From: Isurus oxyrinchus
Taxonomy: Eukaryota
DNA length: 64,000 bases
Assembly: GCA_026770705.1 (NCBI GenBank)
Contig: JANJGN010000017.1
Location: forward strand, 99,634,001-99,698,000
Direction of reading: 5' to 3'
The position numbers were made by a program, and so were the translations under genes. Shown here piece by piece: positions 1,660 through 64,000 of the stretch (position 1 is the stretch's first letter; every line of letters begins with the position of its first letter). The notes under the pieces are model-generated. The model was not told the DNA's origin. It ran no database searches and worked only from the letters and a program-made list of their open reading frames with translations.

Positions 1660-2060
1660 GGTACCCCCGCTTTCAATTCGATGCTGTGCAATCCTCCCCT
1701 TGCAGTACTAATGGAGTGCAGCACGGTCAGGAGGTGCCTTCTGTTGGTTGAGACATTAACCGAGGCCCCTTCTGCACTCTCAGGCGTTCGTAAAAGTTCA
1801 CTATCCGGAACAAGAGTAGGGGAATTCTCTGTTGGTGCCCCTCAGCCAACACCACTGATAAAAGATGATCCGCTCAGCATCACACACTGCTGATCACGTT
1901 CCGAAGACGAGCCAGATTGGACTTGAGAGGTTAGCTCCGTTTCTTTTCCACAGACCTGCTGAGTTTTCCCAGCATTTTCTGTTTTCATTTCAGCCTTCCA
2001 GCATCCAGCGTGTTTTGCTTTATCACATGGCAGGTTGAGGGAGCTTTGCCACGGGTCTTG
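1660..2060 (+). mobile_element. Deu-domain SINE (SacSINE1/AmnSINE1-like), interrupted by a short Penelope-type element
   Basis: ggaggtgcc...gagacattaaccgaggcccc...aagagtagggga resembles the DeuSINE central domain and aligns with the 6157-6515 copy. Confidence 0.7.
1897..2022 (+). mobile_element. Short Penelope-type element (single arm) with degenerate hammerhead core
   Basis: cgtt-ccgaaga-c-gagcc..gactt-gaga-ggtt-agct followed by cagacctgctgagttttcccagcattttctg. Homologous to 34449-34674, 44929-45067 and 55961-56076. Confidence 0.7.
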
Positions 2061-2849: not shown

Positions 2850-4720
2850 ACGTTGTTGGGACAGTGCAGTGATAGCAGCTCTCAACTTCGAATTCATAAT
2901 GTACCTGTCCTGGGAGTGTTTGATGGGGACAGTGTAGAAGGAGTTTTACTCTGTATCTAACCCCGTGCTGTACCTGTCCTGGGAGAGTTTGATGGGGACA
3001 CTGTAGAGGGTGTTTTACTCTGTATCTAACCCTGTGCTGTACCCGTCCTGGGAGTGTTTGATGGGGACAGTGTAGAGGGAGCTTTACTCTGTATCTAACC
3101 CAATGCTGTACCTGTCCTGGGAGTGTTTGATGGGGACATTGTAGAGGGAGTTTTACTCTGTATCTAACCCCGTGCTGTACCTGTCCTGGAAGTGTTTGAT
3201 GGGGACAGTGTAGAGGGAGCTTTACTCTGTATCTAACCCTGTGCTGTACCTGCCCTGGGAGTGTTTGATGGGGACAGTGTAAAGGGAGCTTTACTCTGTA
3301 TCTAACCTTGTGCTGTACCTGTCCTGGGAGTGTTTGATGGGGACAGTGTAGAGGGAGTTTTACTCTGTATCTAACCCCGTGCTGTACCTGTCCTGGGAGT
3401 GTTTGACAGGGACAGTGTAGAGGGAGATTTACTCTGTATCTAACCCAATGCCGTACCTGTCCTGGGAGTGTTTGATGGGGACAGTGTAGAGGGAGCTTTA
3501 CTCTGTATCTAACCCTGTGCTGTACCCGTCCTGGGAATGTTTGATGGGGACAGTGTAGAGGGAGTTTTACTCTGTATCCAACCCCGTGCTGTACCTGTCC
3601 TGGGAGTGTTTGATGGGGACAGTGTAGAGGGAGCTTTACTCTGTCTCTAACCCAATGCTGTACCTGTCCTGGGAGTGTTTGACAGGGACAGTGTAGAGGG
3701 AGCTTTACTCTGTATCTAACCTTGTGCTGTACCTGTCCTGGGAGTGTTTGATGGGGACAGTGTAGAGGGAGCTTTACTCTGTATCTAACCCTGTGCTGTA
3801 CCCGTCCTGGGAGTGTTTGATGGGGACAGTGTAGAGGGAGTTTTACTCTGTATCCAACCCCATGCTGTACCTGTCCTGGGAGTGTTTGATGGGGACAGTG
3901 TAGAGGGAGCTTTACTCTGTCTCTAACCCAATGCCGTACCTGTCCTGGGAGTGTTTGACAGGGACAGTGTAGAGGGAGCTTTACTCTGTATCTAACCTTG
4001 TGCTGTACCTGTCCTGGGAGTGTTTGATGGGGACAGTGTAGAGGGAGCTTTACTGGGTATCTAATCCCATGCTGTACCTGTCCTGCGAGTGTTTGATGGG
4101 GACAGTGTAGAGGGAGCTTTACTCTGGATCTAACCAGGTGCTGTACCTGTCCTGGGAATGTTTGACGGGTTCAGTGTAGAGGGAGATTTACTCTGAATGT
4201 AACCCCGTGCTGTATCTGTCCTGGGAATGTTTGATTGGGACAGTGTAGAAGGAGTTTTACTCTGTATCTAACCTCGTGCTGTACCTGTCCTGAGAGTGTT
4301 TGATGGGGATAATGTAGAGGGAGCTTTACTCTGTATGTAACCCCGTGCTGTATCTGGCCTGGGAGTGTTTGATGGGGACAGTGTAGAGGGAGCTTTACTC
4401 TGTATCTAACCCCGTGCTGTACCTGTCCTTGGGGTGTTTGATGGGGACAGTGTAGATGGGGCTTTACTCTGTATCTAACTCCATGCTGTATCTGGCCTGG
4501 GAGTGTTTGATTTGGGGACAGTGTAGAGGGAGCTTTACTCTGTATCTAACCAGGTGCTGTATCTGGCCTGGGAGTGTTTGATTTGAGGACAGTGTAGAGG
4601 GTGCTTCACTCTGTATCTAACTCTGTGCTGCACTTGTCTTGCAATGGTTCATGGAATGGTGTAGAGGGAGCTTTTTTCTGCATGTAACCTATGCGGTACT
4701 TGATCTGAGAGTATTTGACA
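2850..4720 (+). repeat. 69-bp tandem minisatellite, ~26 copies, degenerate edges
   Basis: Unit ctgtacctgtcctgggagtgtttgatggggacagtgtagagggagctttactctgtatctaaccccgtg. Period 69 (tacctgtcc at 2902 and 2971). Confidence 0.97.
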
Positions 4721-15245: not shown

Positions 15246-17052
15246 ACTAAGGTCAATAGATTTTTGGACTGTAAGCGATTCAGTTGGAGATGGGGTGGGA
15301 ATTTGGAGTTGAAGTCCAAGATCTGCGATGATCTTTTTGAATGATGTAGCATCCTTGGACCATAGACCCAACTCCTGTTCAGGGTTCTTGTGTTTTCCTA
15401 TATTTCAGACTTTAAAGACTTTGTCTCATCATTGGGGAAAAGGTGAATGGCTTCTTTGTTTGGGATCTAGTCATCATACACCAGAATATGTTGCCTTTCC
15501 TCAGTCACAACAGTTTGCAAGATAGGAAGCCTTGCACTGTTGCCCAGAGATAATTATACCTGACTGGCTATCAATGGCATTTTGAAAAGCCTGAGTTGTA
15601 GAAAAAACTGAAAATGTACACGGAACAGCAACGAGGGTAAGGCAGGAACAGAAGTGACATTAAAAGGAGATTGTGATTGTGGGTTCGTAAGCTCAAATCC
15701 AAACACAGAGTGAAAAGGTATAAAACTGACAACACTGTGAGCTGAGAAAGCTGAATATAGAATGTTAAATGAGAGCATCGTGCTAATTTGCCAACAAGAG
15801 GTGATAAAGCCTCAAGGATGAACAAATGCTTGAGTGTCCTAAGAGATAAGAAAGCACTGACCGACCTGAACAACCTCACATTGAAAACAAAGAACAGATG
15901 GAATCACAGTGCATATGTGCACAAGAGGAGGGGAAGTGTTTGAGACTGTTGCTGTCCTTATGTATTAACCTTGGATACGATGTCAGTGTTCAGGTACTAA
16001 ACTTACATACGGAACTGCATAAAGTTAGAAGACACAGGGAACCTGCAGGGCCTCTAACATGTCTTGAAGAGGCTCCCAAGAATGGTAGGAGAGTTTAGTG
16101 ATCAAATCCCCGATGCTTCTGTTACAGCAAAGTGCCATCTAACAAGCACTGGAAATGTAGAATTTGTATTGATTTCATAAAATTATTGATCAGATGACTG
16201 ACTCCCTGGTCTCTTGAGTCCATCAGGCTGCAAGGTATTAAAAGGACACAGATTGTCCTAACACTGCACTCTATTCCTGTTATGCTGTCAATGTGGATAC
16301 ATCTTTGTATCCCCCTCATCCAAGACTGTTACAGCCATTCTGAGCTGGAACAAAAGTAATATTTACAATAAACTTGAATCCCTCTCTGTGATGCCTGAAC
16401 ACATCATGCGAGTTATACAGAGCAGGTCCACCGGGTTCTCTGCTCCTTTGTGTGATCCAGTAACCCATGCTAGAAAATGCAAGAGTGGAGAATCGGCCAC
16501 TGGCTGAGACAGTGCAGGAGAGGTGACACTGTGGATGATGAGTAGGAAGAAAACCTTGCATCATCTCAAGACATCCCAAAACACTTTGTAACCAATGAAG
16601 TAATTTAGTCAATCAGTGAAACATGAAGGGGCTTGACAGGCTAGATGCTAAGGGTGGAATTTAATCCAAGTAATAGGGGCAAGAGAGCCGGTGAGAATCC
16701 TGCATTGCCTCCTTTGGGGGAGGCCTGTTGTATCAAGTGCCTTAGGCTCTTCCTCAGGATCAAGAACCCCAGGGGCTAAAATCTCCTCCCCCACCCCACC
16801 TTTGCCATCCATCAAGGGCAACTGGCCAATCAGAGACCGGCAGCTCCTCATTGCTGTCAGCACCTCTTGAGGGAGCGGCGGTAGCTCTCCGCAATGCACC
16901 CAAGATCAGCAAGGGGCCGAGGCCACTGCTGAGTGATGATGGGATGTGGATCACGTGGAGCTGGATGCTGGCTGGGGAGGGGGGCAGGGCAGAAGGAAGA
17001 AGGGCAGTGGGGTTGCTGTCAGCAAGGCCCCCCCCCACTTCCTGATGATGGG

Positions 17053-21484: not shown

Positions 21485-22214
21485 ATGGAACAATAAGGCA
21501 GCCCACCACCACCTTCTTTGGTCAGTGATGGATGGGGAATAAAATGCCAATGTTAACCATCAGACAAGGATAAATAAAATAATTTAGAAGCTTGAATTTC
21601 AATCAGAATATCAAATGCTTTTCCTCGGTAAATTTCCTATTCCCCAAGATGACCCACCCATTAAAGAAATTCAACCATGAATTGAAAAGCGCAACAGATG
21701 ACCTTTCTTCCCCAAATGCGCAGGCAGATTTGCAAAGGGTATTTGGTTCCAACTGAAGGGGTAAAGTGGACAAGGCAGGGAGAGAATGCTGATCCACAAA
21801 AGGACAGACTTGCACAAGACTTAACATTCTAATATTCCTACTGCTGCACAACAATTTCCTTGCACTCAAAACAATTTGGTCCCTCAGAGGGTAAAATACC
21901 AGACACCACAGAGACATAAATCTTCATAGTGAGCTAATTTTAAAGATGTGAAATAAGGCTTAAAACATGTTTGGAGGATAATAGATGAGACTATTTAACA
22001 CAACAATGCAAGCATGTAACTGGAGAAATGTGCAATTTAGCTCACCGCATGAGACATCTCATTGATTTACACCCAGTTAAACTACAAAACAGGGTCTTTA
22101 TTTTCTCTCCTCTTGATCGAAGTAATTTTTTTTACTGGAATATGACTCCACTCGCACAAGCAACCCTTTAGAATCTCATCTAAAGTAGTCATTCAATCCA
22201 CTTTAGCCTAGGCT

Positions 22215-22663
22215 TTAAGTTATGAAGAGAGGTTGGATAGACTTGGGTTGTTTTCATTGGAGCAGAGAAGACTGAGGAGCAACCTGATCGAGGTGTACAA
22301 GATTATGAGGGGCATGGACAGGGTGGATAGGGAGCAGCTGTTCCCCTTAGTTGAAGGGTCAGTCACGAGTGGACATAAGTTCAAGGTGAGGGACAGGAGG
22401 TTTAAGGGGGATGTGAGGAAAAACCTTTTTACCCAGAGGGTGGTGACGGTCTGGAATGCACTGCCTGGGAGGATGGTGGAGGCGGGTTGCCTCACATCCT
22501 TTAAAAATTACCTGGATGAGCACTTGGCACATCATAACATTCAAGGCTATGGGCCAAGTGCTGGTAAATGGGATTAGGTAGGTAGGTCAGGTGTTTCTCA
22601 CGTGTCAGTGCAGACTCGATGGGCCGAAGAGCCTATTCTGCACTGTGTGATTCTGTGATTCTG
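22215..22663 (+). mobile_element. Young CR1 3' fragment
   Basis: ORF 22233..22577 LDRLGLFSLEQRRLRSNLIEVYKI..FTQRVVTVWNALP; (gattctgt)n tail. Confidence 0.95.
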
Positions 22664-33850: not shown

Positions 33851-34448
33851 GAAAGTTAGCTGAAAGTATCCAATATTGAAGCATTTTCAATCCGTATCCA
33901 AACAGGCAGTGATCTACCGCCTAAACTGTTCATGATTTGGCAGTTCTGCATGTTTCTTCATACTCAGAAACAGCCTAAGGCTCTTTAATTTCAGCCTGCA
34001 TCCACTTTTCTCTATCCCTCAATAAGATCCCAGTCTGTTCAGTAGCTCAGTTCTCAATATCCATTATTTGATATATAACCTGAAATCCCTCAATTGGGTT
34101 GCAGCCTGTAGCTCACTCCGTGGTATCCATTCTCCTGTATATAATTCATCTGAACGCCCTTAATTTGAAAGCAGTTTTACCTGGAATATTCTCTTGAATG
34201 TGTGAATCAACAGAGGATATAGTTGAAAGACGGTGATTATAAGTTCATTGAAAAGTCATCACTATCTGTGGCTTGCAGTTAACATCCCATCTGTCGCTCC
34301 ACAGGTTAAGCACCAGCTGTTAACTCATTGAAAAAAATAAGTCCATCACTGACACGGATGCAAAATTTGACATGGGCACTCCTGGTCCCACAGAGAGCTA
34401 CCAATATCAACGAGAGAATGGTTGCTTGCACAATAGAGGCACACCCTG

Positions 34449-34674
34449 ATAAAAGTAAAACAATGCGAATGCCGGGAAATCTGAAATAAAAACAGAAAAT
34501 GCTGGAAAAACTCAGCAGGTCTGACAGAACCTGTGGAGAGAGAAAAACAGAGTTAATGTTTCAAGTCAGCTCTGAAGATGAGTCACACAGACTCGAAGCA
34601 TCAACTCTGTTTCTCTCTCCACAGATGCTGTCAGACCTGCTGAGATTTTCCAGCATTTTCTGTTTTTATTTCAG
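34449..34674 (+). mobile_element. Fold-back short Penelope-type element with a hammerhead motif at the centre
   Basis: Inverted arms tctgaaataaaaacagaaaatgctggaaaaactcagcaggtctgacag.. and ..ctgtcagacctgctgagattttccagcattttctgtttttatttcaga. Core AGCT-CTGAAGA-T-GAGTC-ACACA-GACTC-GAAG-CATC-AACT (34568-34606). Flanking direct repeat agaggcac. Confidence 0.85.
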
Positions 34675-34894
34675 AGGCACGTCCCGTCCTTGTTCATCCA
34701 CAATTTTTTTTTCCCAGAAATTAAAGCATGACTTTACACAGACTGTCTACAGGGCACCTTCAAGAAACATGGGTGATGTGAGGAGGTAAAATGGGGTCTT
34801 GGATTTGCAATACTAATTGGCCATCAAACTGTCAACATCTGCCACCTTCTCTCAAACTGACAACATTTTCTGGAAGGCCCAGATGCTCAGTTAA

Positions 34895-36239: not shown

Positions 36240-37520
36240 CACAGAATGAAGCTCCCTCTGCACAAGCTTATAAAACATTCTCACTCAGCTACAGAATGAA
36301 TTCGATGCAGATAAGGCTCTCTCTACATTGCCCCATCAATCATGCCAAGGGTAGTCACAGCACAGGTTAGATAGAGAGCAAAGCTCCCTCTACACTGTCA
36401 CCATCAAACACTCCCAGGACAGGTACAGCACGGGGTTAGATACAGAGTAAAGCTACCTCCACAATGTCCCCATCAAACACTCCCGGGACAGGTGCAGCAC
36501 GGGGTTACATACAGAGTAAAGCTCCCTCTACACCGTCCCCATCAAAACACTCCCAGGACAAGTACAGCATGGGGTTAGATACAGAGTAAAGCTCCCTCTA
36601 CACTGTCCCCATCAAACATTCCCAGGACAGGTACAGCACGCGGTCAGATACAGAGTAAAGCTCCCTCTACACTGTCCCCATCAAACACTCCCAGGACAGG
36701 TACAGCATGGGGTTAGATATAGAGTAAAGCTCCCTCTACACTGTCCCCATCAAACACTCCCAGGGCAGGTACAGCACGGGGTTAGATACAGAGTAAAGCT
36801 CCCTCTACACTGTCCCCATCAAACACTCCCAGGACAGGTACGGCATTGGGTTAGATATAGAGTAAAGCTCCCTCTACACTGTCACCATCAAACAGTCCCA
36901 GGACAGGTACAGCACGGGGTTAGATACAGAGTAAAGCTCCCTCTACACTGTCCCCATCAAACACTCCCAGGACAGGTACAGCATGGGGTTAGATATAGAG
37001 TAAAGCTCCCTCTACACTGTCCCCATCAAACACTCCCAGGACAGGTACAGCATGGGGTTAGATATAGAGTAAAGCTCCCTCTACACTGTCCCCATCAAAC
37101 ACTCCCAGGGCAGGTACAGCACGGGGTTAGATACAGAGTAAAGCTCCCTCTACACTGTCCCCATCAAACACTCCCAGGACAGGTACAGCATGGGGTTAGA
37201 TATAGAGTAAAGCTCCCTCTACACTGTCCCCATCAAACACTCCCAGGGCAGGTACAGCACGGGGTTAGATACAGAGTAAAGCTCCCTCTACACCGTCCAC
37301 ATCAAACACTCATAGGGCAGATACAGCATGGGTTTGGATAAAGATAAAGCTACTTTTATACTGTCCACATTAAACACTTGCAAAGCAGGTACAACATAGT
37401 GTTAGATACAGAGTAAAGCTCCCTCTACACTGTCCCCATCAAACACTCCCAGGACAGGTACAGCATGGGGTTAGATACAGAGTAAAGCTCCCTCTACACT
37501 GTCCCATCAAACACTCCTCA
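36240..37520 (-). repeat. 69-bp minisatellite in reverse orientation, ~18 copies, degenerate edges
   Basis: Unit gggttagatacagagtaaagctccctctacactgtccccatcaaacactcccaggacaggtacagcacg is the reverse complement of the 2850-4720 unit. Confidence 0.97.
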
Positions 37521-42040: not shown

Positions 42041-42434
42041 CTTCCTCATGAGATGATTCTCCAGTCAACACAACGGGAGAAGTCGACATGGGGGCAGAGG
42101 GCTGGGCTGTGGTCAGGATGATCAACTCTTTAGAAAAATATAACAGGCAGCTGGACCAGGCATGAGAAGAAACGGAAACCAAGCCTGAAGGAGCGAATCA
42201 ACCAGGGCAGGGGACGGGTGTGAGAGACAAGGGGCCACCACCCCCTCCTCGCGCTACGATGGGGAGTTGCAGCATTTTTCACCTTCAACTGGTGCTGTCT
42301 GCTGCATTCTTTTTCCCTATTTTTATTTGAAAATAAATATTCACTGAAATCTTGAAAATATGTGAAAAAATACCCTCTTCTCACACAAATTCTTGCTTAC
42401 GTAATTCAAGGGGACCAAAATCATTTTGATGTAG

Positions 42435-43028
42435 NNNNNNNNNNNNNNNNNNNNNNNNNNNNNNNNNNNNNNNNNNNNNNNNNNNNNNNNNNNNNNNNNN
42501 NNNNNNNNNNNNNNNNNNNNNNNNNNNNNNNNNNNNNNNNNNNNNNNNNNNNNNNNNNNNNNNNNNNNNNNNNNNNNNNNNNNNNNNNNNNNNNNNNNNN
42601 NNNNNNNNNNNNNNNNNNNNNNNNNNNNNNNNNNNNNNNNNNNNNNNNNNNNNNNNNNNNNNNNNNNNNNNNNNNNNNNNNNNNNNNNNNNNNNNNNNNN
42701 NNNNNNNNNNNNNNNNNNNNNNNNNNNNNNNNNNNNNNNNNNNNNNNNNNNNNNNNNNNNNNNNNNNNNNNNNNNNNNNNNNNNNNNNNNNNNNNNNNNN
42801 NNNNNNNNNNNNNNNNNNNNNNNNNNNNNNNNNNNNNNNNNNNNNNNNNNNNNNNNNNNNNNNNNNNNNNNNNNNNNNNNNNNNNNNNNNNNNNNNNNNN
42901 NNNNNNNNNNNNNNNNNNNNNNNNNNNNNNNNNNNNNNNNNNNNNNNNNNNNNNNNNNNNNNNNNNNNNNNNNNNNNNNNNNNNNNNNNNNNNNNNNNNN
43001 NNNNNNNNNNNNNNNNNNNNNNNNNNNN
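42435..43028. other. Assembly gap (594 N)
   Basis: Run of N. Confidence 1.
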
Positions 43029-43276
43029 TCCACCTGTGAGTTGATCATGGTGATTGTTTTACAGCTAGCGTTCAGTTTAAACCAAATTTAGTTACCTTTT
43101 CATGTGTGCATAATTTGCATTGATGTACCATTTTGTGTGATTCATACAGTTCACGCTATAGTTGATCCTAATGACAGGCTGATGCAAATGTGAAATTTTG
43201 CAGCCAATGTTCCTCCGTTGTGGCCTTTTTGGATATGGTTAAAATGGCTGACAGCAAAAAACTGTGCAAACCCCAC

Positions 43277-43896: not shown

Positions 43897-44928
43897 ATGG
43901 TTTTTGATTTGGTTGGGAGAGGCCTAGGTGTCCTCCCTGGTACTGGACCAGTCTTGCTGGTGCCACTCCTGTTCTCCCCGCGGAGCCTCACCTCATTGTC
44001 CCCGCTCCTTCGTGTGGCGGGAGCACCAGGCCCGGTATGCTCACCACCCCCCAGCGACAGAGAGCCCAAGGCGACAGCAAAGGGGAGACTCCCACATCGC
44101 CGACCTGGAGGCCAGGACTTTTCAGCTTGTCGGCGGTGCCGCACTTTGGGTGTCAGATGGAAATACAGGACAAATGGCACCCCAGAGAGATGTCCTAGGG
44201 GATGCGGGGCAGATGTTAAAAATACCGGACAATGGTCATGCTGGTTGTGAAGCCCTTACAGGTGAATAGTTTGCAGAGACTTCTTGTCCCGGACAAGAGG
44301 GAGAGATGCCAAGATCCAATGCCTCCAGGAGTGGAAGAGCGACAAGGCAGGTGGAAAAAAGGCAGACCCTTCATGTGAAGCATATACTAGTGTGAACGTT
44401 TTAGGCCAAATGGCCTGTTTCTGTGCTACAAATGTAAAGGCCGCCAATAATATGGTTAAAACTTTGGCTTTGGTTTGAGCTGAATAAGTTACTGTCTTCA
44501 AACACACGCTTACACATCACCTCGTCTTGTTCCCAGCTGCAGGTTCACTTTGCCATTCCCCGATACATCTCAGATACACCTAAGTTACCATAGCGTCATG
44601 GAATGAGTCAAGACACCAGGAGATTGTTCAGCCCATCATGCCTGTGCTGGTTAAGGTACTGGTTCATGTGTCCTTGACGGCGCACATTTAAAAATGCAAA
44701 GCATTCAGGAAAAAGTCCAGAGAAACAAAAGACATTCAACAAGAGATGATTGTTTAAAAAAAAAAATTTCTGCATCCACTCAAATTTTCTCTGGCCTTCT
44801 GAAAATTCTGAATCTTGCTGCGGTGAGATTCCAGGGGTGCTAACTAACTAGCCTCAAAGGGCCACTGTCTATGTATAGGCTGAGCTGGTGAACAACTATG
44901 ACCAACAGCATGACTGAGTTTGACGCTA

Positions 44929-45067
44929 AGATAAAAGCAAAATACTGCGGGTGCTGGAAATCCAGAACAAAAACAAAAATACCTGGAAAAACTCCGCCAG
45001 TCTGACAGCATCTGCGGAGAGGGACACAGTTGACCTTTCGAGTCCATGTGACCCTTCGTCAGAACTA
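44929..45067 (-). mobile_element. Short Penelope-type element (single arm) beginning at a hammerhead motif
   Basis: Minus strand agttctgacgaagggtcacatggactcgaaaggtcaactgtgtccctctccgcagatgctgtcagac..ttccagcacccgcagtattttgcttttatct; flanking agtttgac direct repeat. Confidence 0.85.
45028..45066 (-). ncRNA. Minimal type I hammerhead ribozyme motif (near-intact)
   Basis: AGUU [CUGACGA] A GGGUC-ACAUG-GACUC [GAAA] G GUC^AACU. Stem I AGUU/AACU, stem II 5 bp, both core boxes intact. Position 15.2 is G instead of C. Confidence 0.65.
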
Positions 45068-45534
45068 AGACATATGAGTTTCAGTTTGACACCGTCTTGA
45101 ATGGACACAGGCACTCTTCAACAGTGTCGCTGGGCAGCAATCAGCTTTGAGAATCCTCCCTCTTGCTCGCTGAACAGGAATTAATCCTGACATTTTCCTA
45201 CTGTGCAAAGGTTGATCGAAGTGTAGAACTCTCACACACAAAAAAAAAACCACTCGATGCTCACTCAATTCATCATTTTCAATCCGGAAGAGTTAAGAGT
45301 TTTGCCTGACAAAAGGATACAAAGCAAAGCAACGTGTTCCATTCAATTTTCGTTCTGTGTGCGGCCAATTTTTCAGTACATGAAGTCTTTAAATAACTTT
45401 TATCTTGGGAAATTAAGACAGGAACAAGGTCTGCATGGTACTTTCCAGGCTGCTGTTCAGCCTTGCACACACGCAGCTTAACAGCAATGGGTGAATGGAA
45501 TGAGAAAATAGACCGGCCAGTATTGAACTCAATA

Positions 45535-46934: not shown

Positions 46935-47185
46935 TGACCCTTGGTCCCGCGCCATGATTCTGTGTCCCGCGGCTTTGACCACTCAACCCTAAAACATGAA
47001 CCTTGGGCCCACACTGTGACCCTCATCACTGCGCTTTGAGCCCTGACCCCATACCGTGACCCTGGGCCCTGCACCATGACCCTCGGCCCTACACTGTGAC
47101 CCTTGGGCCCTGCACCGTGACCCTCGGCCCCATGCTGTGACCCTTGGGCCCTGCACCGTGACCCTCGGCCCCACGCTGTGACCTT
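46935..47185 (+). repeat. 20-21-bp C-rich minisatellite
   Basis: Units such as tgaccctcggccctacactg and tgacccttgggccctgcaccg. Confidence 0.85.
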
Positions 47186-47521
47186 TGCATGAAGAAATTT
47201 CTCCTCAGCTCAGTCCTAAATGGCTGACTCTTAATCTAGGCTTTGTCACCCCTAGTTCTTGATGCTCCAAGCAGTGGAAGTATCATTCTTCAAAAATTCC
47301 AGCGAATATAGGCTTATTCTAGTCAATCATCCCTCCAAAGACAATACTTTGACTTCAGGAATCAATCTTGTTAACCTTGGTTGCACTTCTTTGTTAGGAT
47401 AAGTAGATCCTTCCATAGATAAGTCTCCTTAGTTATGGAAACCATGGGCCATAACTCTACTTCAGGAGAGGGCAAGACAGGACTCAGCTATGATTCTCAA
47501 CATGGGTTGAACAGCTTCTCA

Positions 47522-55865: not shown

Positions 55866-55960
55866 GCCCAGATAATCGGTGCCTATAACATCAGTCTGTG
55901 ACACTCCCTCATGGTCAGACTGATGTCACTCAGCACCACAGCCCACGCATGAAGAATGGC

Positions 55961-56076
55961 TTCAAAAACAGAAAATGCTGGAAAAAATCAGCAGGTCTGG
56001 CAGACCTGCTGATTTTTTCCAGCATTTTCTGTTTTAATTTCAGATTTCCAGCATCCACAGTGTTTTGCTTTTATCT
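55961..56076. mobile_element. Centrally deleted fold-back Penelope-type element forming a perfect palindrome
   Basis: 35-bp arms 55965-55999 and 56001-56035 are exact reverse complements around one G. Flanking 11-bp direct repeat atgaagaatgg (55949-55959, 56077-56087). Confidence 0.9.
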
Positions 56077-57804
56077 ATGAAGAATGGTTACTTGTGTGGA
56101 CTACTGGAGGCCAACTCAGGCCCACAGTACTGTACCTTGGCAATAGTCAGTGCCTGCGGAGAGATGGGGGACAATAAATACATTGAAATATCTAAAAAAA
56201 AACTACATAGGATGCATTAAATAACACAGTTTAAAATGAGTTTTCAGCAGAGCTGCTGTTCTCTATTTAATTGAGGCCCCCCTATCTGTTCTCTACAGGT
56301 GATTAATGATAGTGTATACATGTTCTACTGTACAGCAACGAGCACTTGTGGAAGACACAATACAGCGACTGTAAAGATGAACAGAATCTCTCTGCACAAT
56401 TGCCAGCATGATTGCAGAAAGTGTACACAATCCAAAAACAACAACAGTGAAACACAAAGGGCACTCTCCAGCACCAGGAGCCAACAACAGCTGCACATTA
56501 ATCTCACAGCGAGTGTAAACTTTCAGGGAGAAATGCAAGGGAAAAGGATACCCTGATTAAAGTCTCTGCCAGTGTACACATACTGCATAAATAAAAATTG
56601 GCGGCTTAAGGATATTGATTGACATTTCCAATCCTCCATGTCAGGCCTTCCTTTGTCAATAGTGACATTACAAATTGGGATGGCATTGCAAAGCAGCTCA
56701 TTGATTGGATTGGGACTGTGACCTTTGGTCTGAGAGCCAATCTCGAGTTGATAGAGCCCGTGAAAAGTGAGACAGGCTTACACTTTGTACTTATTTCCTG
56801 CATTTCATCAACACGTTCGTGCGGGTTTGAGGGAGGCGGGTTTGGCCACAGCTGTTGTGAAGGCTACTTGGTGTCCCTCGAAGAGGGGCCGGGTGGATCA
56901 TTCCCCCTGCTCTTCTTCCCATGGTTTCACTTAATGTTTTATGTTCGGTTTAATACCTCATCCAAGATGACGGGAGCTCCAACACTGCAGCATGCCCTCA
57001 GTAGTGCACTGAAGCATCTACCTCAGCTTTGATCCTCAAGACGCTGGAGGGGGATTTGAACCCACAATCTCCTGAATCAGGAAGCAAGAATTCCTACCTC
57101 CTGAGCCACAGCTGGAACATCAAGTTGCCTCTGCTCCATTCCAATAAACCGGCCTGAAGGTCAGAAGTTATGGACCATTGGAGTGTGAGTTCTACAACTG
57201 GGCGGAGCTGGGTGACTTGGAAGATGTGCTACCACTGGGGATGAAGTTCCAAACAAAAATTTTAGGGCCTATCTCTTTCAACAGCTAAATGCAGTTTCGA
57301 TAAGACTTACTGCCTCTGTGTTTTCTGTCTTCTTTAATGCATAACGTTAAACAAGTAACATCAGCTGCCGAGGTGACATTCAACAGCTGTTCCGAGACAT
57401 TTTTTTCTTGCATCTGCATTAAGATGCCCGCCCAGCCACAACTGAATCGAGGTCTGCAGCTTATCAATGTAAAAGCTCTGGAGGAACACGCCTTCTCACA
57501 AAGCAGGAGGAAACAGTGCCTGCTGCAGGTAATCTGGGCATATTTCTGACCCCATGCCCGAATTACTTCTCTTGAAAGTAGAGCATAGCTCCGTGGGCGA
57601 AATCATGCCCCCACCTCCCCCCAACCACCACACCCCCCCCCCACCCCCGCCACCCCCGCCCCAACCCCTACCGCACCCCACTCCTTCCCAGGACCTCACC
57701 CAATCAGCCACTGCTCATTGGTGCTTCCAAGGCTAGAAAGCCATCAACTCCCAAATGACAGGGTTGTTCCAGTGAACCGCAGCAGACGAGAACAGACAGC
57801 CAGA

Positions 57805-58120: not shown

Positions 58121-59744
58121 GTTACGAGTTTTATTTGCCAGGAGGCTTGTCTAAGTTTACCAGCTGACAAGCACAAAGACAGCCACCTCAAAGATTAGCA
58201 GAGTGGAGAGACAGACACGTCTAGACACCCCGCCCATTCACGTGCATTCCTGATTTAAAATGATCTCGAACCTCCATTTCAACGACAGCACTGCATGTTG
58301 CCTGTTTCTAGCAGTTTAAAGCCTTTTCACCAAAACCTTTCCAAAAATTACCGTAATAATCAGGACTATATTGGCATTTATGCAGGGCCCTACTGTAAAT
58401 CTTGGCTCTGTTTTTTACACCTTTGGTATCCCCAATCACTGTGTCTGACTGGGGTTCAGCTCAAATGAGTGCTGACTGACCTCTGATTCACCACCCATTC
58501 TTAACTCAGGAGCTCAGTAAGTTCTGGACACAGCCAGGCACTAGCCCCCACACACGGGCACTTTACACCAGACTGATTGGCAGCGGGAACACGAGTTGAT
58601 CTTCCATTCTCCAACCAAGGGTCCCAGTGTGGTCGATTATCCCATTCAAACCGGTGCCCTGGTCAAGATCAGATATCTGACCCGAGATTGGGGTTTGAAC
58701 TTGGGGCACTCTGGGCTGAACAGCTTAATAGTTCAGCTTTTTTTTTCTGAACGTTTGATTTTAATTCCTGCGTAAATAATTAAGTGCCTGAGAGTTTCCA
58801 GCAACCTGGACTCAAATATGTTATTTCTTATGTTTCAACGGGAAACAGGCACTGAATGGAGATGTGTTTCTTTAATTCCTGCTCTTGAAGCTGGTTAAAG
58901 CTGTCAAAGGGATTTGGCTGGGACTTTAGGAAATCGGCACCACATCAGAACTGAACTCAGGAGTATTAAGAGTCATCCTTTACAAATGCTGAACTCCCAG
59001 GTTGGAATTGTGCCTGCATTAAGATGAAAACCTCAATGCTGCTGTGAGTTGACCTCCAGCTTACACGCATCCTTGCTCCCAAGTACCCAGTGGATGATTG
59101 CATTCCAATTAGGCTGACACAAAGAGCCGAAAGAGATCCCAAATGGATTGTCTGTCAATAGAAAAAAGTTAAAGGCTAAGGATCTTGAACCAAAGATTTC
59201 ACCTGCACACGTAATTAGTTTTTATATCACAACGAATATTCCAGAAGATAAGATGTACACAGCTGGGAAAGGTAACATAATCACCAGCCAACTCTCATTA
59301 ACACTTGGATCCTTAAAGGGCTCCTCATTACAAATTGCGGAATCTAACAAATTGACGCTTGATTTACTGAAAATATCTTACGTTGGGGAAAAAAAACTAA
59401 TGCACCGACATTAAAGAACAAAATAAAATGGCCCAGGTTTCATTTCATATAAAGTCCTTACCTGAAGGAAATAACTGCAGAAATATCTGTCCTGACAATG
59501 TGAGGGCAGCGGTGGGGGGAAGGATGTCAGAAATTGAGAGATCTATAAAATATGCATTAGATTGCTTTAACACTTTTCTCAAGGTTAATGGTGTTTTAGC
59601 GTGGACCAGTTTATTGAGAGAAGGCAACTGTTGCTTGATGCCAGACACGTTTACTAGCTGCGTGTCGAAATTGTTGACATTCTGGTTAATGCAGGACCAC
59701 AACATTCAGTGGAAAGGCTGGAATCGGTTTCTCCCCCTTGGTAA

Positions 59745-62700
59745 ACACCAGGGTCAGCCCCTTGGGGCGGACACCGGAGTCAGTGTCATGGGGCGGACAG
59801 CGGGGTCAGTGTCATAGGGCGGACGCCGGGGTCAGTGTCATGGGGCGGACAGTGGGGTCAGTGTCCTGGGGCGGACGCCGGGGTCAGTGTCATGGGGCAG
59901 ACGCCGGGGTCAGTATCCTGGGGCGGACACCGGGGTCAGTGTCCTGGGGCGGACACCGGGGTCAGTGTCCTGGGACGGATGCCGGGATCAGTGTCATGGG
60001 GCGGACAGCGGGGTCAGTGTCCTGGGGCGGACACCGGGGTCAGTGTCATGGGGCGGACACCGGGATCAGTGTCCTGGGGCAGACACCGGGGTCAGTGTCC
60101 TGGGACGGACGCCGGGGTCAGTGTCCTGGGGCAGACACCGGGGTCAGTGTCCTGGGACGGATGCCGGGATCAGTGTTATGGGGCGGACAGCGGGGTCAGT
60201 ATCCTGGTGTGGACGACGGGGTCAGTGTCCTGGGGCGGACGCTGGGGTCAGTGTCATGGGGCGGACACCGGGGTCAGTGTCCTGGGGCGGACACCGGGGT
60301 CAGTGTCCTGGGACGGATGCCGGGATCAGTGTTATGGGGCGGACAGCGGGGTCAGTATCCTGGTGTGGATGACGGGGTCAGTGTCCTGGGGCGGACGCCG
60401 GGGTCAGTGTCATGGGGCGGACACCGGGGTCAGTGTCATGGGGCGGACACCGGGGTCAGTGTCCTGGGGCGGACACTGGGGTCAGTGTCCTGGGACGGAT
60501 GCCGGGATCAGTGTTATGGGGCGGACAGCGGGGTCAGTATCCTGGTGTGGACGCCGGGGTCAGTGTCATGGGGCGGACACCAGGGTCAGTGTCATGGGGC
60601 GGACACCAGGGTCAGTGTCATGGGGCGGACACTGGGGTCAGTGTCCTGGGGCGGACACTGGGGTCAGTATCCTGGTGCAGACGACGGGGTCAGTGTCCTG
60701 GGGCAGACGACGGGGTCAGTGTCATGGGACGGATGCCGGGATCAGTGTCATGGGGCGGACACCAGGGTCAGTGTCATGGGGCGGACACCAGGGTCAGTGT
60801 CATGGGGCGAAAACCGGGGTCAGTGTCCTGGGGCGGACACCGGGGTCAGTGTCCTGGGGCGGACACCGGGGTCAGTGTCCTGGGGCGGACACCGGGGTCA
60901 GTGTCCTGGGACGGATGCCGGGATCAGTGTCATGGGGCAGACAGCGGGGTCAGTATCCTGGTGCAGACGACGGGGTCAGTGTCCTGGGACAGACGACGGG
61001 GTCAGTGTCATGGGGCGGACACTGGGGTCAGTGTCATGGGGCGGACACTGGGGTCAGTGTCATGGGGCGGACACTGGGGTCAGTATCCTGGTGCAGACGA
61101 CGGGGTCAGTGTCCTGGGGCAGACGACGGGGTCAGTGTCCTGGGGCAGACGACGGGGTCAGTGTCATGGGGCGGACAGCGGGGTCAGTGTCCTGGTGCGG
61201 ACGACGGGGTCAGTGTCCTGGGGCGGACACCGGGGTCAGTGTCCTGGGACGGACACCGGGGTCAGTGTCATGGGGCGGACAGCGGGGTCAGTATCCTGGG
61301 GCAGACACCGGGGTCAGTGTCCTGGGGCGGACACCGGGGTCAGTGTCCTGGGGCGGACGCCGGGATCAGTGTCATGGGGCAGACGACGGGGTCAGTGTCC
61401 TGGTGCGGACGCCAGGGTCAGTGTCATGGGGCGGACAGCGGGGTCAGTGTCCTGGGGCAGACGCCAGGGTCAGTGTCATGGGGTGGACAGCGGGGTCAGT
61501 GTCCTGCGGCAGACTCCGGGGTCAGTGTCCTGGGGCAGACATCAGGGTCAGTGTCCTGGGGCGGACATGGGGGTCAATGTCCTGGGGCACACGCCAGGTT
61601 CAGTGTCCCGAGGCGGACATGGGGGTCAATGTCCTGGGGCACACGCCAGGTTCAGTGTCCCGAGGCGGAAGCTGGGGTCAGTGTCCTGGGGCGGACATGG
61701 GGGTCAATGTCCTGGGGCACACGCCGGGTTCAGTGTCCCGAGGCGGAAGCTGGGGTCAGTGTCATGGGGCGGACACTGGGGTCAGTATCCTGGTGCAGAC
61801 GACGGGGTCAGTGTCATGGGGCGGACGCCGGGGTCAGTGTCATGGGGCGGACGCCGGGGTCAGTGTCATGGGGCGGACGCTGGGGTCAGTGTCCTGGGGC
61901 AGACACCAGGGTCAGTGTCATGGGGTGGATGTGGGGTCAGTGTCATTGGGCGGACAGGTGGGTCAGTATCCTGGGGCGGATGCCGGGGTCAGTGTCATGG
62001 GGCGGACAGCGGGGTCAGTGTCCTGGGGCGGACACTGGGGTCAGTGTCATGGGGTGGACAGCGGGGTCAGTGTCCTGGGGCGGACGCCGGGGTCAGTGTC
62101 CTGGGGCGGACGCCGAGGTCAGTGTCCTGGGGCGGACGCCGGGGTCAGTGTCCTGGTGCAGACGACGGGGTCAGTGTCATGGGGCAGACAGCGGGGTCAG
62201 TGTCCTGGTGCGGACGACGGGGTCAGTGTCTGGGGCGGACGCCGGGGTCAGTGTCATGGGGCGGATGCCGGGGGTGTCCTGGGGCGGACGCCGGGGTCAG
62301 TGTCCTGCGGCAGACTCCGGGGTCAGTGTCCTGGGGCAGACATCAGGGTCAGTGTCCTGGGGCGGACATGGGGGTCAATGTCCTGGGGCACACGCCAGGT
62401 TCAGTGTCCCGAGGCGGAAGCTGGGGTCAGTGTCCTGGGGCGGACATGGGGGTCAATGTCCTGGGGCACACGCCGGGTTCAGTGTCCCGAGGCGGAAGCT
62501 GGGGTCAGTGTCCTGGGGCGGACATGGGGGTCAATGTCCTGGGGCACACGCCTGAGTCAGTGTCCCGGGGCGGAAGCCGGGGTCAGTGTCTTGGGGCGGA
62601 CACCGGGGTCAGTGTCCTGGGGCGGACAGCGGGGTCAGTGTCCTGGTGCGGATGACGGGGTCAGTGTCTGGGGCGGACGCCGGGGTCAGTGTCATGGGGT

Positions 62701-63821
62701 GGACAGCGGGGTCAGTATCCTGGGGCGGATGCCGGGGTCAGTGTCCTGGGGCGGATGTTGGGGGTGTCCTGGGGCGGACGCCGGGGTCAGTGTCCTGCGG
62801 CAGACTCCGGGGTCAGTGTCCTGGGGCAGACATCGGGGTCAGTGTCCTGGGGCGGACATGGGAGTCAATGTCCTGGGGCACACGCCGGAGTCAGTGTCCC
62901 GGGGCGGAAGCCGGGGTCAGTGTCTTGGGGCGGACGCCGGGGTCAGTGTTCTGGGGCGGACAGCGGGGTCAGTGTCATGGGGCGGATGCCGGGGTCAGTG
63001 TCCTGGGGCGGATGTTGGGGTCAGTGTCCTGGGGCGGACATGGAGGTCAATGTCCTGGGGCACTCGCCGGGGTCAGTGTCCCGGGGCGGAAGCTGGGGTC
63101 AGTGTCCTGGGGCGGACATGGGGGTCAATGTCCTGGGGCACACGCCGGGGTCAGTGTCCTGGGGCTGATGCTGGGGGTGTCCTGGGGCGGACGCCGGGGT
63201 CAGTGTCCTGGGGCGGATGTTGGGGGTGTCCTGGGGCGGACGCCGGTGTCAGTGTCTTGGGGCGGATGTTGGGGGTGTCCTGCGGCAGACTCTGGGGTCA
63301 GTGTCCTGGGGCAGATACCGGGGTCAGTGTCCTGGGGCGGACATGGGGGTCAATGTCCTGGGGCACACGCCGGGGTCAGTGTCCCGGGGCGGAAGCCGGG
63401 GTCAGTGTCCTGGGGCGGACATGGGGGTCAATGTCCTGGGGCACACGCCGGGGTCAGTGTCCCGGGGCGGAAGCCGGGGTCAGTGTCCTGGGGCGGACAT
63501 GGGGGTCAATGTCCTGGGGCACACGCCGGGGTCAGTGTCCCGGGGCGGAAGCCGGGGTCAGTGTCTTGGGGCGGACGCCGGGGTCAGTGTCCTGGGGCGG
63601 ACATGGGGGTCAATGTCCTGGGGCACACGCCGGGGTCAGTGTCCCGGGGCGGAAGCCGGGGTCAGTGTCTTGGGGCGGACGCCGGGGTCAGTGTCCTGGG
63701 GCGGACATGGGGGTCAATGTCCTGGGGCACACGCCGGGGTCAGTGTCCCGGGGCGGAAGCCGGGGTCAGTGTCCTGGGACGGACATGGGGGTCAATGTCC
63801 TGGGGCGGACATGGGGGTCAG
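59745..63821 (+). repeat. 26-bp G-rich minisatellite, ~155 copies, with a distal 78-bp higher-order repeat
   Basis: Unit ggggtcagtgtc(c/a)tggggcggac(a/g)cc; period 26 (gtcagtgtc at 59831 and 59857). Confidence 0.98.
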
Positions 63822-64000
63822 CATTACTTCATTCTACACTAGCAAGTGACTATTTTATGATGTAGTTTGAAAGATAACCAGACTGCTTCAGAGGAGGATG
63901 GGCTGTGTGACAAGATGCTGGAATCCTAAATATTGCCTTGATATTAAAGCTGTTGGGGTATGGTGTGTGGCTTCAGATCTCCTTCGCTGGCAAGGACTAC

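What the first reader, a model, noticed from the sequence alone, without database searches (positions are those of the whole stretch)
45028..45066. Near-intact minimal hammerhead ribozyme at the 5' end of a short non-coding retroelement
Seen: the minus strand reads AGUU-CUGACGA-A-GGGUC-ACAUG-GACUC-GAAA-G-GUC-AACU. Both catalytic boxes (CUGANGA, GAAA), a 5-bp stem II, a GUC cleavage triplet and a closing stem I (AGUU/AACU) are present, and the ~140-bp element starts almost exactly at this motif. Known: Penelope-like elements carry minimal type I hammerheads whose stem III is reduced to a short palindrome thought to pair in a dimer. An extra A after A9 occurs in a natural viroid hammerhead (CChMVd). 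Inference: with the 34568 and 1897 copies the consensus is AGTT CTGANGA N GRGTC n5 GACTC GAAAC GTC AACT, a complete hammerhead with an ACGT palindrome. This copy differs only at 15.2 (C>G). The family looks like a retrozyme-like, ribozyme-processed non-autonomous retroposon, with four members in 64 kb.
Basis: partly seen in the sequence, partly recalled or inferred. Interest (0 to 1): 0.85.

Follow-up and report, generated by a model that had tools for sequence, protein, structure and literature searches.

The report
Penelope-type hammerhead in retroelement fossil
The motif is a real minimal hammerhead ribozyme of the kind long known from Penelope-like jumping genes, sitting in an old, slightly damaged 149-bp end-fragment of a hugely abundant repeat, so it is an ordinary member of a known class and not a new kind of element.

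Summary
The 39-nt motif is at 45028-45066 (minus strand). It has both core boxes, a bulged A, a 5-bp helix II, GUC and a 4-5-bp helix I. A hammerhead descriptor finds only this site in 64 kb and nothing in 300 shuffles.

It lies 106 nt upstream of the 3' end of a 149-bp insert flanked by a target-site duplication. That insert is one of four loci (six arms) of one family in the window. Contigs from public runs show the family is extremely abundant in this species and in a sister species.

This copy has G there, so it cannot form the dimeric helix III and is probably dead.

The insertion anatomy matches Penelope-like elements (PLEs). There are two alternative 3' ends 37-40 nt apart (the "tail"). 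Fold-back twin copies carry the tail on one arm only. Target-site duplications, AT-rich targets and 5' truncation are all present.

I found no PLE ORF link, no tandem array and no RNA ends, so "retrozyme-like, ribozyme-processed" is only partly supported.

This scan had already noted PLE hammerheads many times on other pieces of this genome. Verdict: new member of a known kind (Cervera & de la Peña 2014), modest interest.

The parts
45028..45066 (-). Minimal type-I hammerhead motif. It comprises helix I (AGUU/AACU, plus a U.G at 45067/45027), CUGACGA, a bulged A, helix II (GGGUC/GACUC, loop ACAUG), GAAA, G15.2 G16.2 U16.1 C17. The predicted cut lies between 45032 and 45031.
44926..45074 (-). 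Whole 149-bp retro-insert: an 8-12-nt leader, the hammerhead, a 40-nt linker and a two-part tail.
   Evidence: Single-copy contigs of the sister species cross both junctions (records 25 and 32).
45075..45090 (-). Upstream copy of the duplicated target (GTCAAACTGAAACTCA).
44915..44924 (-). Downstream copy of the duplicated target (GTCAAACTCA).
44962..44991 (-). Tail sub-repeat 1. Its end corresponds to the alternative upstream 3' end used by the tail-less arms.
   Evidence: (D4, spacing 37)
44926..44961 (-). Tail sub-repeat 2, the optional 36-38-nt 'tail'. Family 3' ends scatter over 44926-44929.
   Evidence: (loose ends: 294, 296, 176 and 196 contigs in X1)
34443..34565 (-). Inverted left arm of the 34.6-kb fold-back insert. 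It carries the full tail and is 5'-truncated inside the hammerhead 3' half (CTTGAAACATT/AACT).
34566..34672 (+). Right arm of the fold-back. It has a degenerate hammerhead at 34568-34606 (GAAG at 15.1, helix I mismatches) and ends at the first 3' site without the tail. The duplicated target AGAGGCAC lies at 34435-34442 and 34673-34680.
1893..2026 (+). Third hammerhead-bearing copy. The motif at 1898-1936 is decayed (CCGAAGA, GAGA, helix II broken), and there is a 13-nt gap after the motif relative to the other copies.
55963..56076 (.). Fold-back insert made of tails only, with its centre at 55999/56000. The tail is on the right arm only. The duplicated target ATGAAGAATGG lies at 55949-55959 and 56077-56087.

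Best explanation
This is a fossil copy of the 3'-terminal module of a Penelope-like retroelement (PLE) family, or of a short non-coding derivative that PLE enzymes copy. The module consists of a PLE-type minimal hammerhead followed by about 106 nt that carry the place(s) where reverse transcription starts.

Shown: the motif is real and family-inherited, the insertion architecture is as described, the family is highly abundant, and this copy is old and off-majority.

Inferred from published PLE work: the family's source RNA is transcribed from tandem or read-through copies. A PLE reverse transcriptase/GIY-YIG endonuclease nicks AT-rich DNA on one or both strands. It starts cDNA synthesis at one of two internal sites at the ends of two related sub-repeats and often stops early. 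This yields short 3' fragments, fold-back twins and a duplicated target.

The hammerhead has no helix III of its own. It would cut only when two copies pair through the ACGU palindrome (15.1-16.1), probably with protein help, trimming multimeric RNA. This particular copy has AGGU, cannot make that helix, and is most likely inactive. Published in vitro data on an anole PLE suggest that cleavage is not needed for insertion.
For: 1. The motif matches the features listed for metazoan PLE min-HHRs in PMC4209133 (parts 1-2 of 4 of the text read). These are a short helix I of 4-5 bp, an unpaired nucleotide between A9 and 10.1, a G10.1-C11.1 pair, helix III reduced to a palindromic 15.2-16.2, occurrence mostly as dispersed single motifs, and some pairs on opposite strands 100-700 bp apart. 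Evidence here.

2. The family majority restores the palindrome: C15.2 is 73-87% and G16.2 at least 90% in 4 of 4 runs. No variant at 5% or more is listed at A13, A14, A15.1, U16.1 or anywhere in 45049-45066.

3. Both fold-backs in the window (2 of 2) carry the 36-38-nt tail on one arm only. This is the signature drawn for PLEs in PMC8557442 (Fig. 2 legend, passage read) and called unique to PLEs in PMC11167929 (abstract and passages).

4. The tail is two related sub-repeats; only 3, 4 and 9 of 500 shuffles reach the observed alignment score in three copies.

5. The geometry matches. The cut site lies 106 nt from the 3' end here. In the anole element PAc the cut is 26 nt after the ATG and RT starts 111-118 nt into the ORF, which gives 85-92 nt (PMC11167929).

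6. The family's 3' ends are sharp at 44926-44929, with heterogeneous A/T-rich flanks (agreement 0.35-0.37; 962 contigs in X1 and 968 in X5). There is no poly(A).

7. Duplicated targets of 7-11 bp are present at 3 of 4 loci.

8. The summed contig depth is 1.2-2.7 million over the tail, 162,000 over the hammerhead 3' part and 12,700 over its 5' part, against 16.5 in the flanks (X1). This fits heavy 5' truncation. The tool warns that these figures are not a copy number.

9. Single-copy contigs of organism B cross both junctions. Organism B shares 0.36-0.39 of the 31-mers, so the insertion predates the split.

10. An earlier agent reached the same PLE fold-back reading on another window of this genome (s1-865399). 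I treated that as a lead only.
Against: - No RT or GIY-YIG ORF is linked to this tail. A crude motif scan of the window found none.
- Rfam has no hammerhead match, either at gathering score in 64 kb or at E<=10 in 401 nt.
- The 41-nt RNA does not prefer the hammerhead fold. Its MFE is -10.1 kcal/mol with the core paired to GGUC, against -6.9 for helices I+II. The z-score is -1.1, and 31 of 200 shuffles fold as well.
- Only 1 of 3 hammerhead-bearing copies in the window passes the descriptor.
- There is no compensatory change in 9 pairs across 3 copies.
- Core variants exist in the family. G12 is replaced by A in 9-25% of depth. A CCGAUGA (U4C) form appears in 11 contigs of X20 and in the 1.9-kb copy.
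- Variable positions are not clearly rarer in the motif (8 of 39) than in the tail (about 22 of 75). Soft-clipping and the 80% likeness cut bias that table towards this copy, and 3 rows were not shown.
- All three hammerhead-complete arms start only 6-12 nt upstream of C3. Plain random truncation of a long PLE does not predict this.
Confidence: 0.78

Rival explanations
1. The family is a discrete non-autonomous unit of about 139-150 nt (hammerhead plus tail), a very small retrozyme or PLE-parasitic SINE. Its RNA is cut to unit length by the hammerhead, possibly circularised, and copied slightly more than once around by a PLE enzyme.
For: - In 3 of 3 hammerhead-complete arms the 5' end lies 6-12 nt upstream of C3. 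The few leader letters also mirror that copy's own tail end: TCTTAG / TCTTAG in the 45-kb copy (period 139), TCAG / TCAG in the 34.6-kb fold-back, and ATCAC / ATCAC in the 1.9-kb copy.
- One contig each in X1 and X5 joins 45076 back to 44925, which is a head-to-tail joint. One contig each joins 45030 to 45066 on opposite strands, so one arm starts at the motif's 5' edge and the other about 1 nt from the cut site.
- The all-depth figure falls 2.9-fold between 45025 and 45032, across the cut site.
- Solo monomers of PLE-derived retrozymes, with consensus lengths of 51-972 bp and including one cartilaginous fish, are described in bioRxiv 10.64898/2026.07.22.740005 (abstract, Results part 1 and passages read).
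- First-reader notes of this scan list tandem hammerhead arrays elsewhere in this genome (unchecked).
Against: - The leader/tail matches are only 4-6 nt long, come from three old copies, and for the 1.9-kb copy could be the target duplication.
- There is no tandem array in the window.
- Flanks of the family's 3' end are heterogeneous and AT-rich, not hammerhead sequence, so arrays are at most rare.
- 11 contigs of X20 continue upstream of 45069 with one consistent T-rich sequence (agreement 0.91), so some members are longer.
- Depth in the motif declines stepwise (358,662 at 45032, 116,181 at 45039, 47,786 at 45046). Alignment drop-off in short repeat contigs would produce this pattern.
- No RNA ends or circle junctions could be read.
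Confidence: 0.3
2. The hammerhead-like string is a chance feature of an unrelated SINE/LINE 3' tail and was never a ribozyme.
For: No Rfam match. The MFE is not the hammerhead fold. There are no compensatory changes. Two of three window copies have broken cores.
Against: The descriptor gives 0 hits in 300 shuffles of 64 kb. Four features not needed by chance coincide with the published PLE min-HHR (bulge after A9, G10.1-C11.1, palindromic 15.2-16.2 in the family majority, short helix I). The host element also shows PLE-specific insertion anatomy (PMC8557442, PMC11167929).
Confidence: 0.05
3. This particular copy has been taken over by the host as a working ribozyme, for example in processing an overlapping transcript.
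For: The copy is retained in two species. Its boxes are intact and it has the favoured GUC triplet, whereas most of the family has GUU.
Against: The palindrome needed for the dimeric helix III is broken and no second copy lies nearby. Sequence identity to the sister species is no higher here than in the flanks, as far as one search shows. The motif is predicted to be sequestered in the fold of the whole insert.
Confidence: 0.02

Closest known systems
Minimal hammerhead ribozymes of metazoan Penelope-like elements (Cervera & de la Peña 2014, PMC4209133)
   Same: Type-I topology, a 4-5-bp helix I, CUGANGA and GAAA boxes, an unpaired base after A9, a G10.1-C11.1 pair, and helix III reduced to a palindrome (in the family majority). 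The motifs are dispersed as single copies in truncated elements, sometimes paired on opposite strands. They are very numerous and variable within one genome.
   Different: This copy has G15.2, so it has no palindrome. Most of the family has U17 and not C. Helix II is 5 bp, against the 7-8 bp reported for schistosome families. No flanking PLE ORF has been shown here.
PAc, the Poseidon PLE of Anolis carolinensis (Frangieh et al. 2024, PMC11167929)
   Same: The hammerhead lies about 100 nt upstream of the internal reverse-transcription start that defines the genomic 3' end. There are two adjacent start sites that give an optional tail. Targets are AT-rich, and both DNA strands are cut and extended, which explains fold-backs.
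   Different: In PAc the ORF begins inside the hammerhead and the start sites lie in an AC-rich stem-loop within the ORF. Here the region after the motif is T-rich and made of two sub-repeats. I found no long protein starting with its translation.
Metazoan non-LTR retrozymes (de la Peña et al. 2020, PMC7229834; Li et al. 2026 preprint)
   Same: Short non-coding hammerhead-bearing retroposed DNA with duplicated targets and low GC. According to the preprint they derive from PLE terminal repeats and also occur as solo monomers.
   Different: Retrozymes were defined by tandem units of about 170-400 nt, canonical hammerheads with loop-loop contacts, and abundant circular RNAs. Here the copies are dispersed, the unit would be about 139-150 nt, the ribozyme is the minimal type, and no RNA evidence exists.
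The A6U (CUGUYGA) Penelope hammerhead families noted by this scan elsewhere in the same genome
   Same: Same genome, same kind of 39-nt minimal motif, and the same fold-back and duplicated-target inserts.
   Different: This family keeps the canonical A6, with no variant at 5% or more listed at 45059. I could not compare the sequences because the other windows are not readable from here.

Membership tests
Hammerhead ribozyme (minimal type I, PLE variant) | CUGANGA box | tested here: met
   CTGACGA at 45062-45056. The 34.6-kb copy has CTGAAGA. The 1.9-kb copy has CCGAAGA and does not meet it.
Hammerhead ribozyme (minimal type I, PLE variant) | GAAA box (G12 A13 A14 A15.1) | tested here: met
   GAAA at 45039-45036. 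The other window copies read GAAG and GAGA. In the family, G12 is replaced by A in 9-25% of depth, and no variant at 5% or more is listed at A13-A15.1.
Hammerhead ribozyme (minimal type I, PLE variant) | Helix II of at least 4 bp closed by G10.1-C11.1, with one unpaired base after A9 | tested here: met
   GGGUC/GACUC with the bulged A at 45055. In helix II, 14 of 15 cells are paired over 3 copies.
Hammerhead ribozyme (minimal type I, PLE variant) | Helix I closing the motif, and U16.1-H17 at the cut site | tested here: met
   AGUU/AACU plus one U.G pair, with GUC. The family majority has U17, at 68-84%.
Hammerhead ribozyme (minimal type I, PLE variant) | Palindromic 15.2-16.2, so that two copies can form helix III | tested here: not met
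   This copy has A-G-G-U. The family majority has A-C-G-U, with C15.2 at 73-87%.
Hammerhead ribozyme (minimal type I, PLE variant) | Match to curated covariance models | tested here: not met
   There were 0 Rfam matches at gathering score in 64 kb and no hammerhead family at E<=10 in 44800-45200. I did not establish whether Rfam models cover helix-III-less variants.
Hammerhead ribozyme (minimal type I, PLE variant) | Covariation in the helices | tested here: inconclusive
   With 3 copies, 24 of 27 cells are paired and 0 of 9 pairs change on both sides; 500 of 500 shuffles reach the observed values.
Hammerhead ribozyme (minimal type I, PLE variant) | Self-cleavage | not testable with these tools
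   All four runs were contigs, so no RNA ends could be read.
Penelope-like element (insertion products) | RT plus GIY-YIG ORF joined to this terminus | tested here: inconclusive
   None was found in the window by a crude motif scan. Protein searches with the tail's ORF were blank or irrelevant.
Penelope-like element (insertion products) | Optional 30-40-bp tail, often on one side of the insert only | tested here: met
   In 2 of 2 fold-backs the 36-38-nt second sub-repeat is on one arm only.
Penelope-like element (insertion products) | Inverted 5'-truncated copy adjoining, heavy 5' truncation, duplicated target | tested here: met
   Fold-backs occur at 2 of 4 loci and duplicated targets at 3 of 4 loci. 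Depth falls about 10-fold per 27-nt bin towards the 5' side.
Penelope-like element (insertion products) | Direct terminal repeats (pLTR) from partial tandems | tested here: inconclusive
   Only 4-10-nt leader/tail-end matches were seen, plus one head-to-tail joint per species in contigs.
Non-LTR retrozyme | Tandem units, each with a hammerhead | tested here: not met
   There is no array of the unit in the window.
Non-LTR retrozyme | Canonical type-I hammerhead with loop 1-loop 2 contacts | tested here: not met
   Helix I is 4-5 bp without a loop 1, and the motif is the minimal variant.
Non-LTR retrozyme | Unit-length circular RNA | not testable with these tools
   Only contigs were available, and the 'RNA' label of X20 and X21 is a guess.

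The most novel reading that the evidence does not exclude
The family's successful form may be a discrete mini-element of about 139 nt, consisting only of a canonical-core minimal hammerhead plus a duplicated reverse-transcription start module. It would be copied slightly more than once around from a circular or tandem RNA by a PLE enzyme. That would make it the smallest retrozyme-like parasite of PLEs. It would also be a natural case where the 5' ends (at the motif's edge and at the cut site) record ribozyme processing in vivo.
Probability: 0.25. Interest if true: 0.55.

Novelty: new member of a known kind. Interest (0 to 1): 0.3.

Why it matters
On its own this copy matters little. It is a decayed fossil of a class described in 2014, and this scan has noted that class many times in this genome.

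Two points give it some value. First, this family keeps the canonical A6 core, while other very abundant families noted in the same genome carry A6U. One genome may therefore offer a natural comparison of whether hammerhead activity matters for PLE spread. Second, the family shows the two-start-site 'tail' anatomy especially plainly, as a duplicated 31-37-nt module. Its short copies seem to begin at a fixed place just upstream of the ribozyme.

A genome-wide map of 5' ends could test whether hammerhead cleavage or circular templates take part in PLE or retrozyme copying in vivo. The anole in vitro work (PMC11167929) left that question open.

Tried and rejected
1. I first thought the inverted left arm of the 34.6-kb fold-back began exactly at the predicted cut site, which would have been evidence of cleavage in vivo. 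The alignment shows it extends 11 nt further, into GAAAC and helix II. I rejected the idea.

2. I considered that the 106-nt tail might be the start of a PLE ORF, as in PAc. The frame from the ATG at 45011 is open to the end of the insert in the window copies. However, a second frame is open too because the sequence is T-rich. The word-index search gave 1 short ORF (P0001, 78 aa). The full HMMER search gave 3 hits, all translations of unrelated tandem repeats. There is no support for this idea.

3. I looked for more copies of the family outside the window. There were 0 matches in JGI metagenome contigs, GTDB genome contigs and IMG/VR. A genome-wide consensus and a covariation test were therefore not possible. 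The contig pile-up stands in for them, with its biases.

4. The joints from 44645-44651 to 44926-44968 first looked like a second repeat abutting family 3' ends. (D5) shows that 44639-44650 merely resembles the CCAGCA motif of the tail. I do not use these joints as evidence for 3' end classes.

5. The weak nhmmer hits at 16726-16764 (E 0.46) and 22214-22245 (E 5) were read and are not hammerheads. A search for the A6U core with boxes only gave 5 overlapping matches at 3 sites against 2.17 expected, none with stems.

6. The depth ratio between tail and flanks is not used as a copy number, because the tool warns against that.

7. I did not verify the organism. 'Shark' comes from earlier notes of this scan and from my own recollection that this tail and the 69-bp satellite look like elasmobranch repeats.

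8. Supplementary files of the papers were not opened. The PLE hammerhead alignments (supplement of PMC4209133) and the species tables of the 2026 preprint might already hold this family.

Full report
**What is in the sequence.** On the minus strand, 45066 to 45028 reads AGTT-CTGACGA-A-GGGTC-ACATG-GACTC-GAAA-GG-TC-AACT (exact pattern unique in the window). Mapped onto hammerhead numbering, this gives the following:
- helix I of 4 bp, plus a U.G pair at 45067/45027;
- C3-A9 as CUGACGA;
- one unpaired A;
- helix II of 5 bp closed by G10.1-C11.1, with a 5-nt loop;
- G12-A15.1 as GAAA;
- G15.2, G16.2, U16.1 and C17, with the cut predicted between 45032 and 45031.

**Is it more than chance?** The two boxes alone are not rare. 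One search finds 2 matches against 0.22 expected, and the second match has no stems. A descriptor that also demands helices I and II and U16.1-H17 finds only this site on both strands, and nothing in 300 dinucleotide-preserving shuffles. Allowing one core mismatch still finds only this site, with a mean of 0.05 hits per local shuffle.

**What does not support it.**
- Rfam gives no match at gathering score in the whole window. No hammerhead family appears at E<=10 in 44800-45200; the two matches listed are snoRNA models at E 2.3 and 8.2.
- The 41-nt RNA folds to -10.1 kcal/mol with helix II formed but the core paired to GGUC. The z-score is -1.1, and 31 of 200 shuffles fold as well.
- The helix I+II structure alone scores -6.9 kcal/mol.
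- Because helix III is absent, a single copy cannot be an active hammerhead. This is the expected property of the minimal variants.

**The element around it.** blastn and a profile search find six arms at four loci, with E at most 8e-14. The next-best hits have E of 0.46 or more and are not related.
- *The 45-kb copy.* It runs 45074-44926 (149 bp) between repeated flank sequence. AAACTCA is exact on both sides, and GTCAAACT is also on both sides.
- *The 34.6-kb locus.* It is a fold-back between two copies of AGAGGCAC. An inverted left arm (34443-34565) carries the full tail. A right arm (34566-34672) carries a degenerate hammerhead and ends 38 nt earlier.
- *The 56-kb locus.* It is a fold-back of tails only between two copies of ATGAAGAATGG. 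Again the last 33-37 nt are on one arm only.
- *The 1.9-kb copy.* It has a decayed motif (CCGAAGA, GAGA).

The last 66 nt of the family are two related sub-repeats. D4 shows a spacing of 37, and only 3, 4 and 9 of 500 shuffles reach the alignment score in three copies. The two classes of 3' end fall at the ends of these two sub-repeats.

**Family-wide evidence.** The stretch 44600-45400 was laid with contigs of four public runs at 80% likeness or more. The runs were X1 (same species), X5 (a relative sharing 0.39 of the 31-mers), and X20 and X21 (labelled RNA by guess).
- *Depth.* The flanks have depth 16.3-16.5 in X1. The tail (44924-45031) has 1.2-2.7 million, 45032-45058 has 162,000 and 45059-85 has 12,700. 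In total 16,747 contigs of X1 were laid. The tool warns that this is not a copy number, but the family is plainly very abundant in both species.
- *3' ends.* They are sharp. In X1, 294, 296, 176 and 196 contigs end at 44926-44929, with heterogeneous A/T-rich sequence beyond (agreement 0.35-0.36). X5 shows the same pattern.
- *Variation inside the motif.* The listed variants (5% of depth or more) are as follows:

| Position | Change | Share of depth |
|---|---|---|
| 15.2 | G to C | 73, 78, 84, 87% |
| 15.2 | G to U | 22, 19, 14, 10% |
| H17 | C to U | 79, 83, 84, 68% |
| G12 | to A | 10, 9, 25, 14% |
| C11.1 | to U | 5-18% |
| G16.2 | to A | 3-10% |
| loop II | three positions vary | up to 82% in X1 |

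- *No variant listed.* Nothing at 5% or more is listed at A13-A15.1, at U16.1, in helix I, or anywhere in 45049-45066.
That part of the prediction holds.
- *Caveats.* The table favours contigs that resemble this copy. Alignments stop instead of showing mismatches near their ends. Three rows were not shown. The number of variable positions is not clearly lower in the motif (8 of 39) than in the tail (about 22 of 75).
- *A U4C form.* It is seen in 11 contigs of X20 and in the 1.9-kb copy.
- *Age of the insertion.* Single-copy contigs of X5 cross both junctions (records 25 and 32), so the insertion predates the split of the two species.

**What it is.** The motif has each of the features that Cervera and de la Peña list for metazoan PLE hammerheads (PMC4209133, parts 1-2 of the text read):
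- a short helix I;
- an unpaired base after A9;
- a G10.1-C11.1 pair;
- a palindromic 15.2-16.2 in place of helix III;
- mostly dispersed single motifs from truncated elements;
- some pairs on opposite strands;
- great variability within a genome.

The insertion anatomy is the one described for PLEs: heavy 5' truncation, an adjoining inverted truncated copy, and a 30-40-bp tail often present at one end only (PMC8557442, passages including the Fig. 2 legend). Frangieh et al. (PMC11167929, abstract and passages) explain that tail by two adjacent internal start sites of reverse transcription. They call it unique to PLEs and show cutting and extension of both DNA strands at AT-rich sites.

In their element the cut site lies 85-92 nt upstream of the start sites; here it lies 106 nt upstream. 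I therefore read the family as the 3' module of a PLE, or of a short derivative copied by a PLE enzyme. I read this copy as an old fossil whose broken palindrome makes it inactive. An earlier agent of this scan reached the same reading for fold-back inserts on another window. I used that only as a lead and derived the anatomy here.

**How it most likely works.**
- *Shown:* the sequence features, the insertion architecture, the abundance, the age and the off-majority state.
- *Inferred from the literature:* source RNAs with two or more units let two hammerheads pair through ACGU and cut, probably slowly and with protein help. In vitro activity of metazoan PLE motifs is low (PMC4209133), and the PAc motif cut only with protein present (PMC11167929).
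- *Also from the PAc work:* cleavage does not seem to be required for insertion. PAc core mutants still inserted, and no RNA ends were found at the cut site. The U4C and G12A forms seen here fit that picture.

**What stays open.**
- I could not link the tail to an RT/GIY-YIG ORF. There is none in the window by a crude scan. Two protein searches with the ORF across the motif and tail were blank or irrelevant.
- All three arms that contain the whole motif begin only 6-12 nt upstream of C3. Their few leader letters mirror the same copy's tail end: TCTTAG/TCTTAG with a period of 139, TCAG/TCAG, and ATCAC/ATCAC.
- One contig per species shows a head-to-tail joint. Another shows a fold-back with one arm starting at 45066 and the other at 45030.
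However, they rest on very short matches in three old copies.
- Against the idea, there is no tandem array in the window. Most family 3' flanks are unrelated AT-rich DNA. Some contigs continue upstream of the motif with a consistent sequence.
- I give this refinement about 0.25-0.3.

**Comparison with the known.** PLE minimal hammerheads have been in print since 2014. Dispersed solo monomers derived from PLE terminal repeats, including in one cartilaginous fish, are described in a 2026 preprint (10.64898/2026.07.22.740005; abstract, Results part 1 and passages read). This scan holds 298 notes with the words 'hammerhead ribozyme' in this genome, mostly on families with an A6U core. The present family keeps A6.

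It is a new member of a known kind. I did not verify the species; 'shark' comes from those notes and from recollection. I did not find this sequence in print (0 papers for a 17-nt piece of the tail). Supplementary alignments were not seen.

**Verdict.** Interest is modest (0.3). The most useful follow-up is a genome-wide map of 5' and 3' ends and of tandem joints for this family.

Noticed in passing
window 59745-63821: A 26-bp G+C-rich minisatellite with 157.5 copies and 82% matches. It explains the GC of 0.67 in the last 4 kb and the apparent 1375-aa ORF at 59738-63865, which is an artefact of the repeat.
   Followed up: partly
window 2900-4689 and 36304-37517: Two arrays of the same 69-bp satellite (25.9 and 17.7 copies, 89% matches) in opposite orientation, 32 kb apart. 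From memory the unit resembles a common elasmobranch repeat; I did not check this.
   Followed up: no
window 34435-34680: In the fold-back insert the degenerate hammerhead sits next to the centre of a hairpin of about 110 bp. One arm ends at the first 3' site and the other at the second. Another note of this scan covers it (s1-898413).
   Followed up: partly
window 44926-44991 (and the same part of the other copies): The family's tail is an internal duplication of a 31-37-nt module (TTTCCAGCA...TGTTTT...TAT.T.AG). Each module end is used as a 3' end, so the PLE 'tail' here is simply the second module.
   Followed up: yes
window 45065-45074 versus 44926-44935; 34566-34569 versus 34446-34449; 1893-1897 versus 2022-2026: The leader letters just upstream of the hammerhead repeat the same copy's tail end. 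This could be a terminal redundancy, a target duplication or chance.
   Followed up: partly
window 42435-43028: A run of 594 N (gap or masked). The two long 'ORFs' at 42341-43048 on both strands are artefacts of it. It was left untouched.
   Followed up: no
window 47006-47187: A short G+C-rich 20/41-bp tandem repeat.
   Followed up: no
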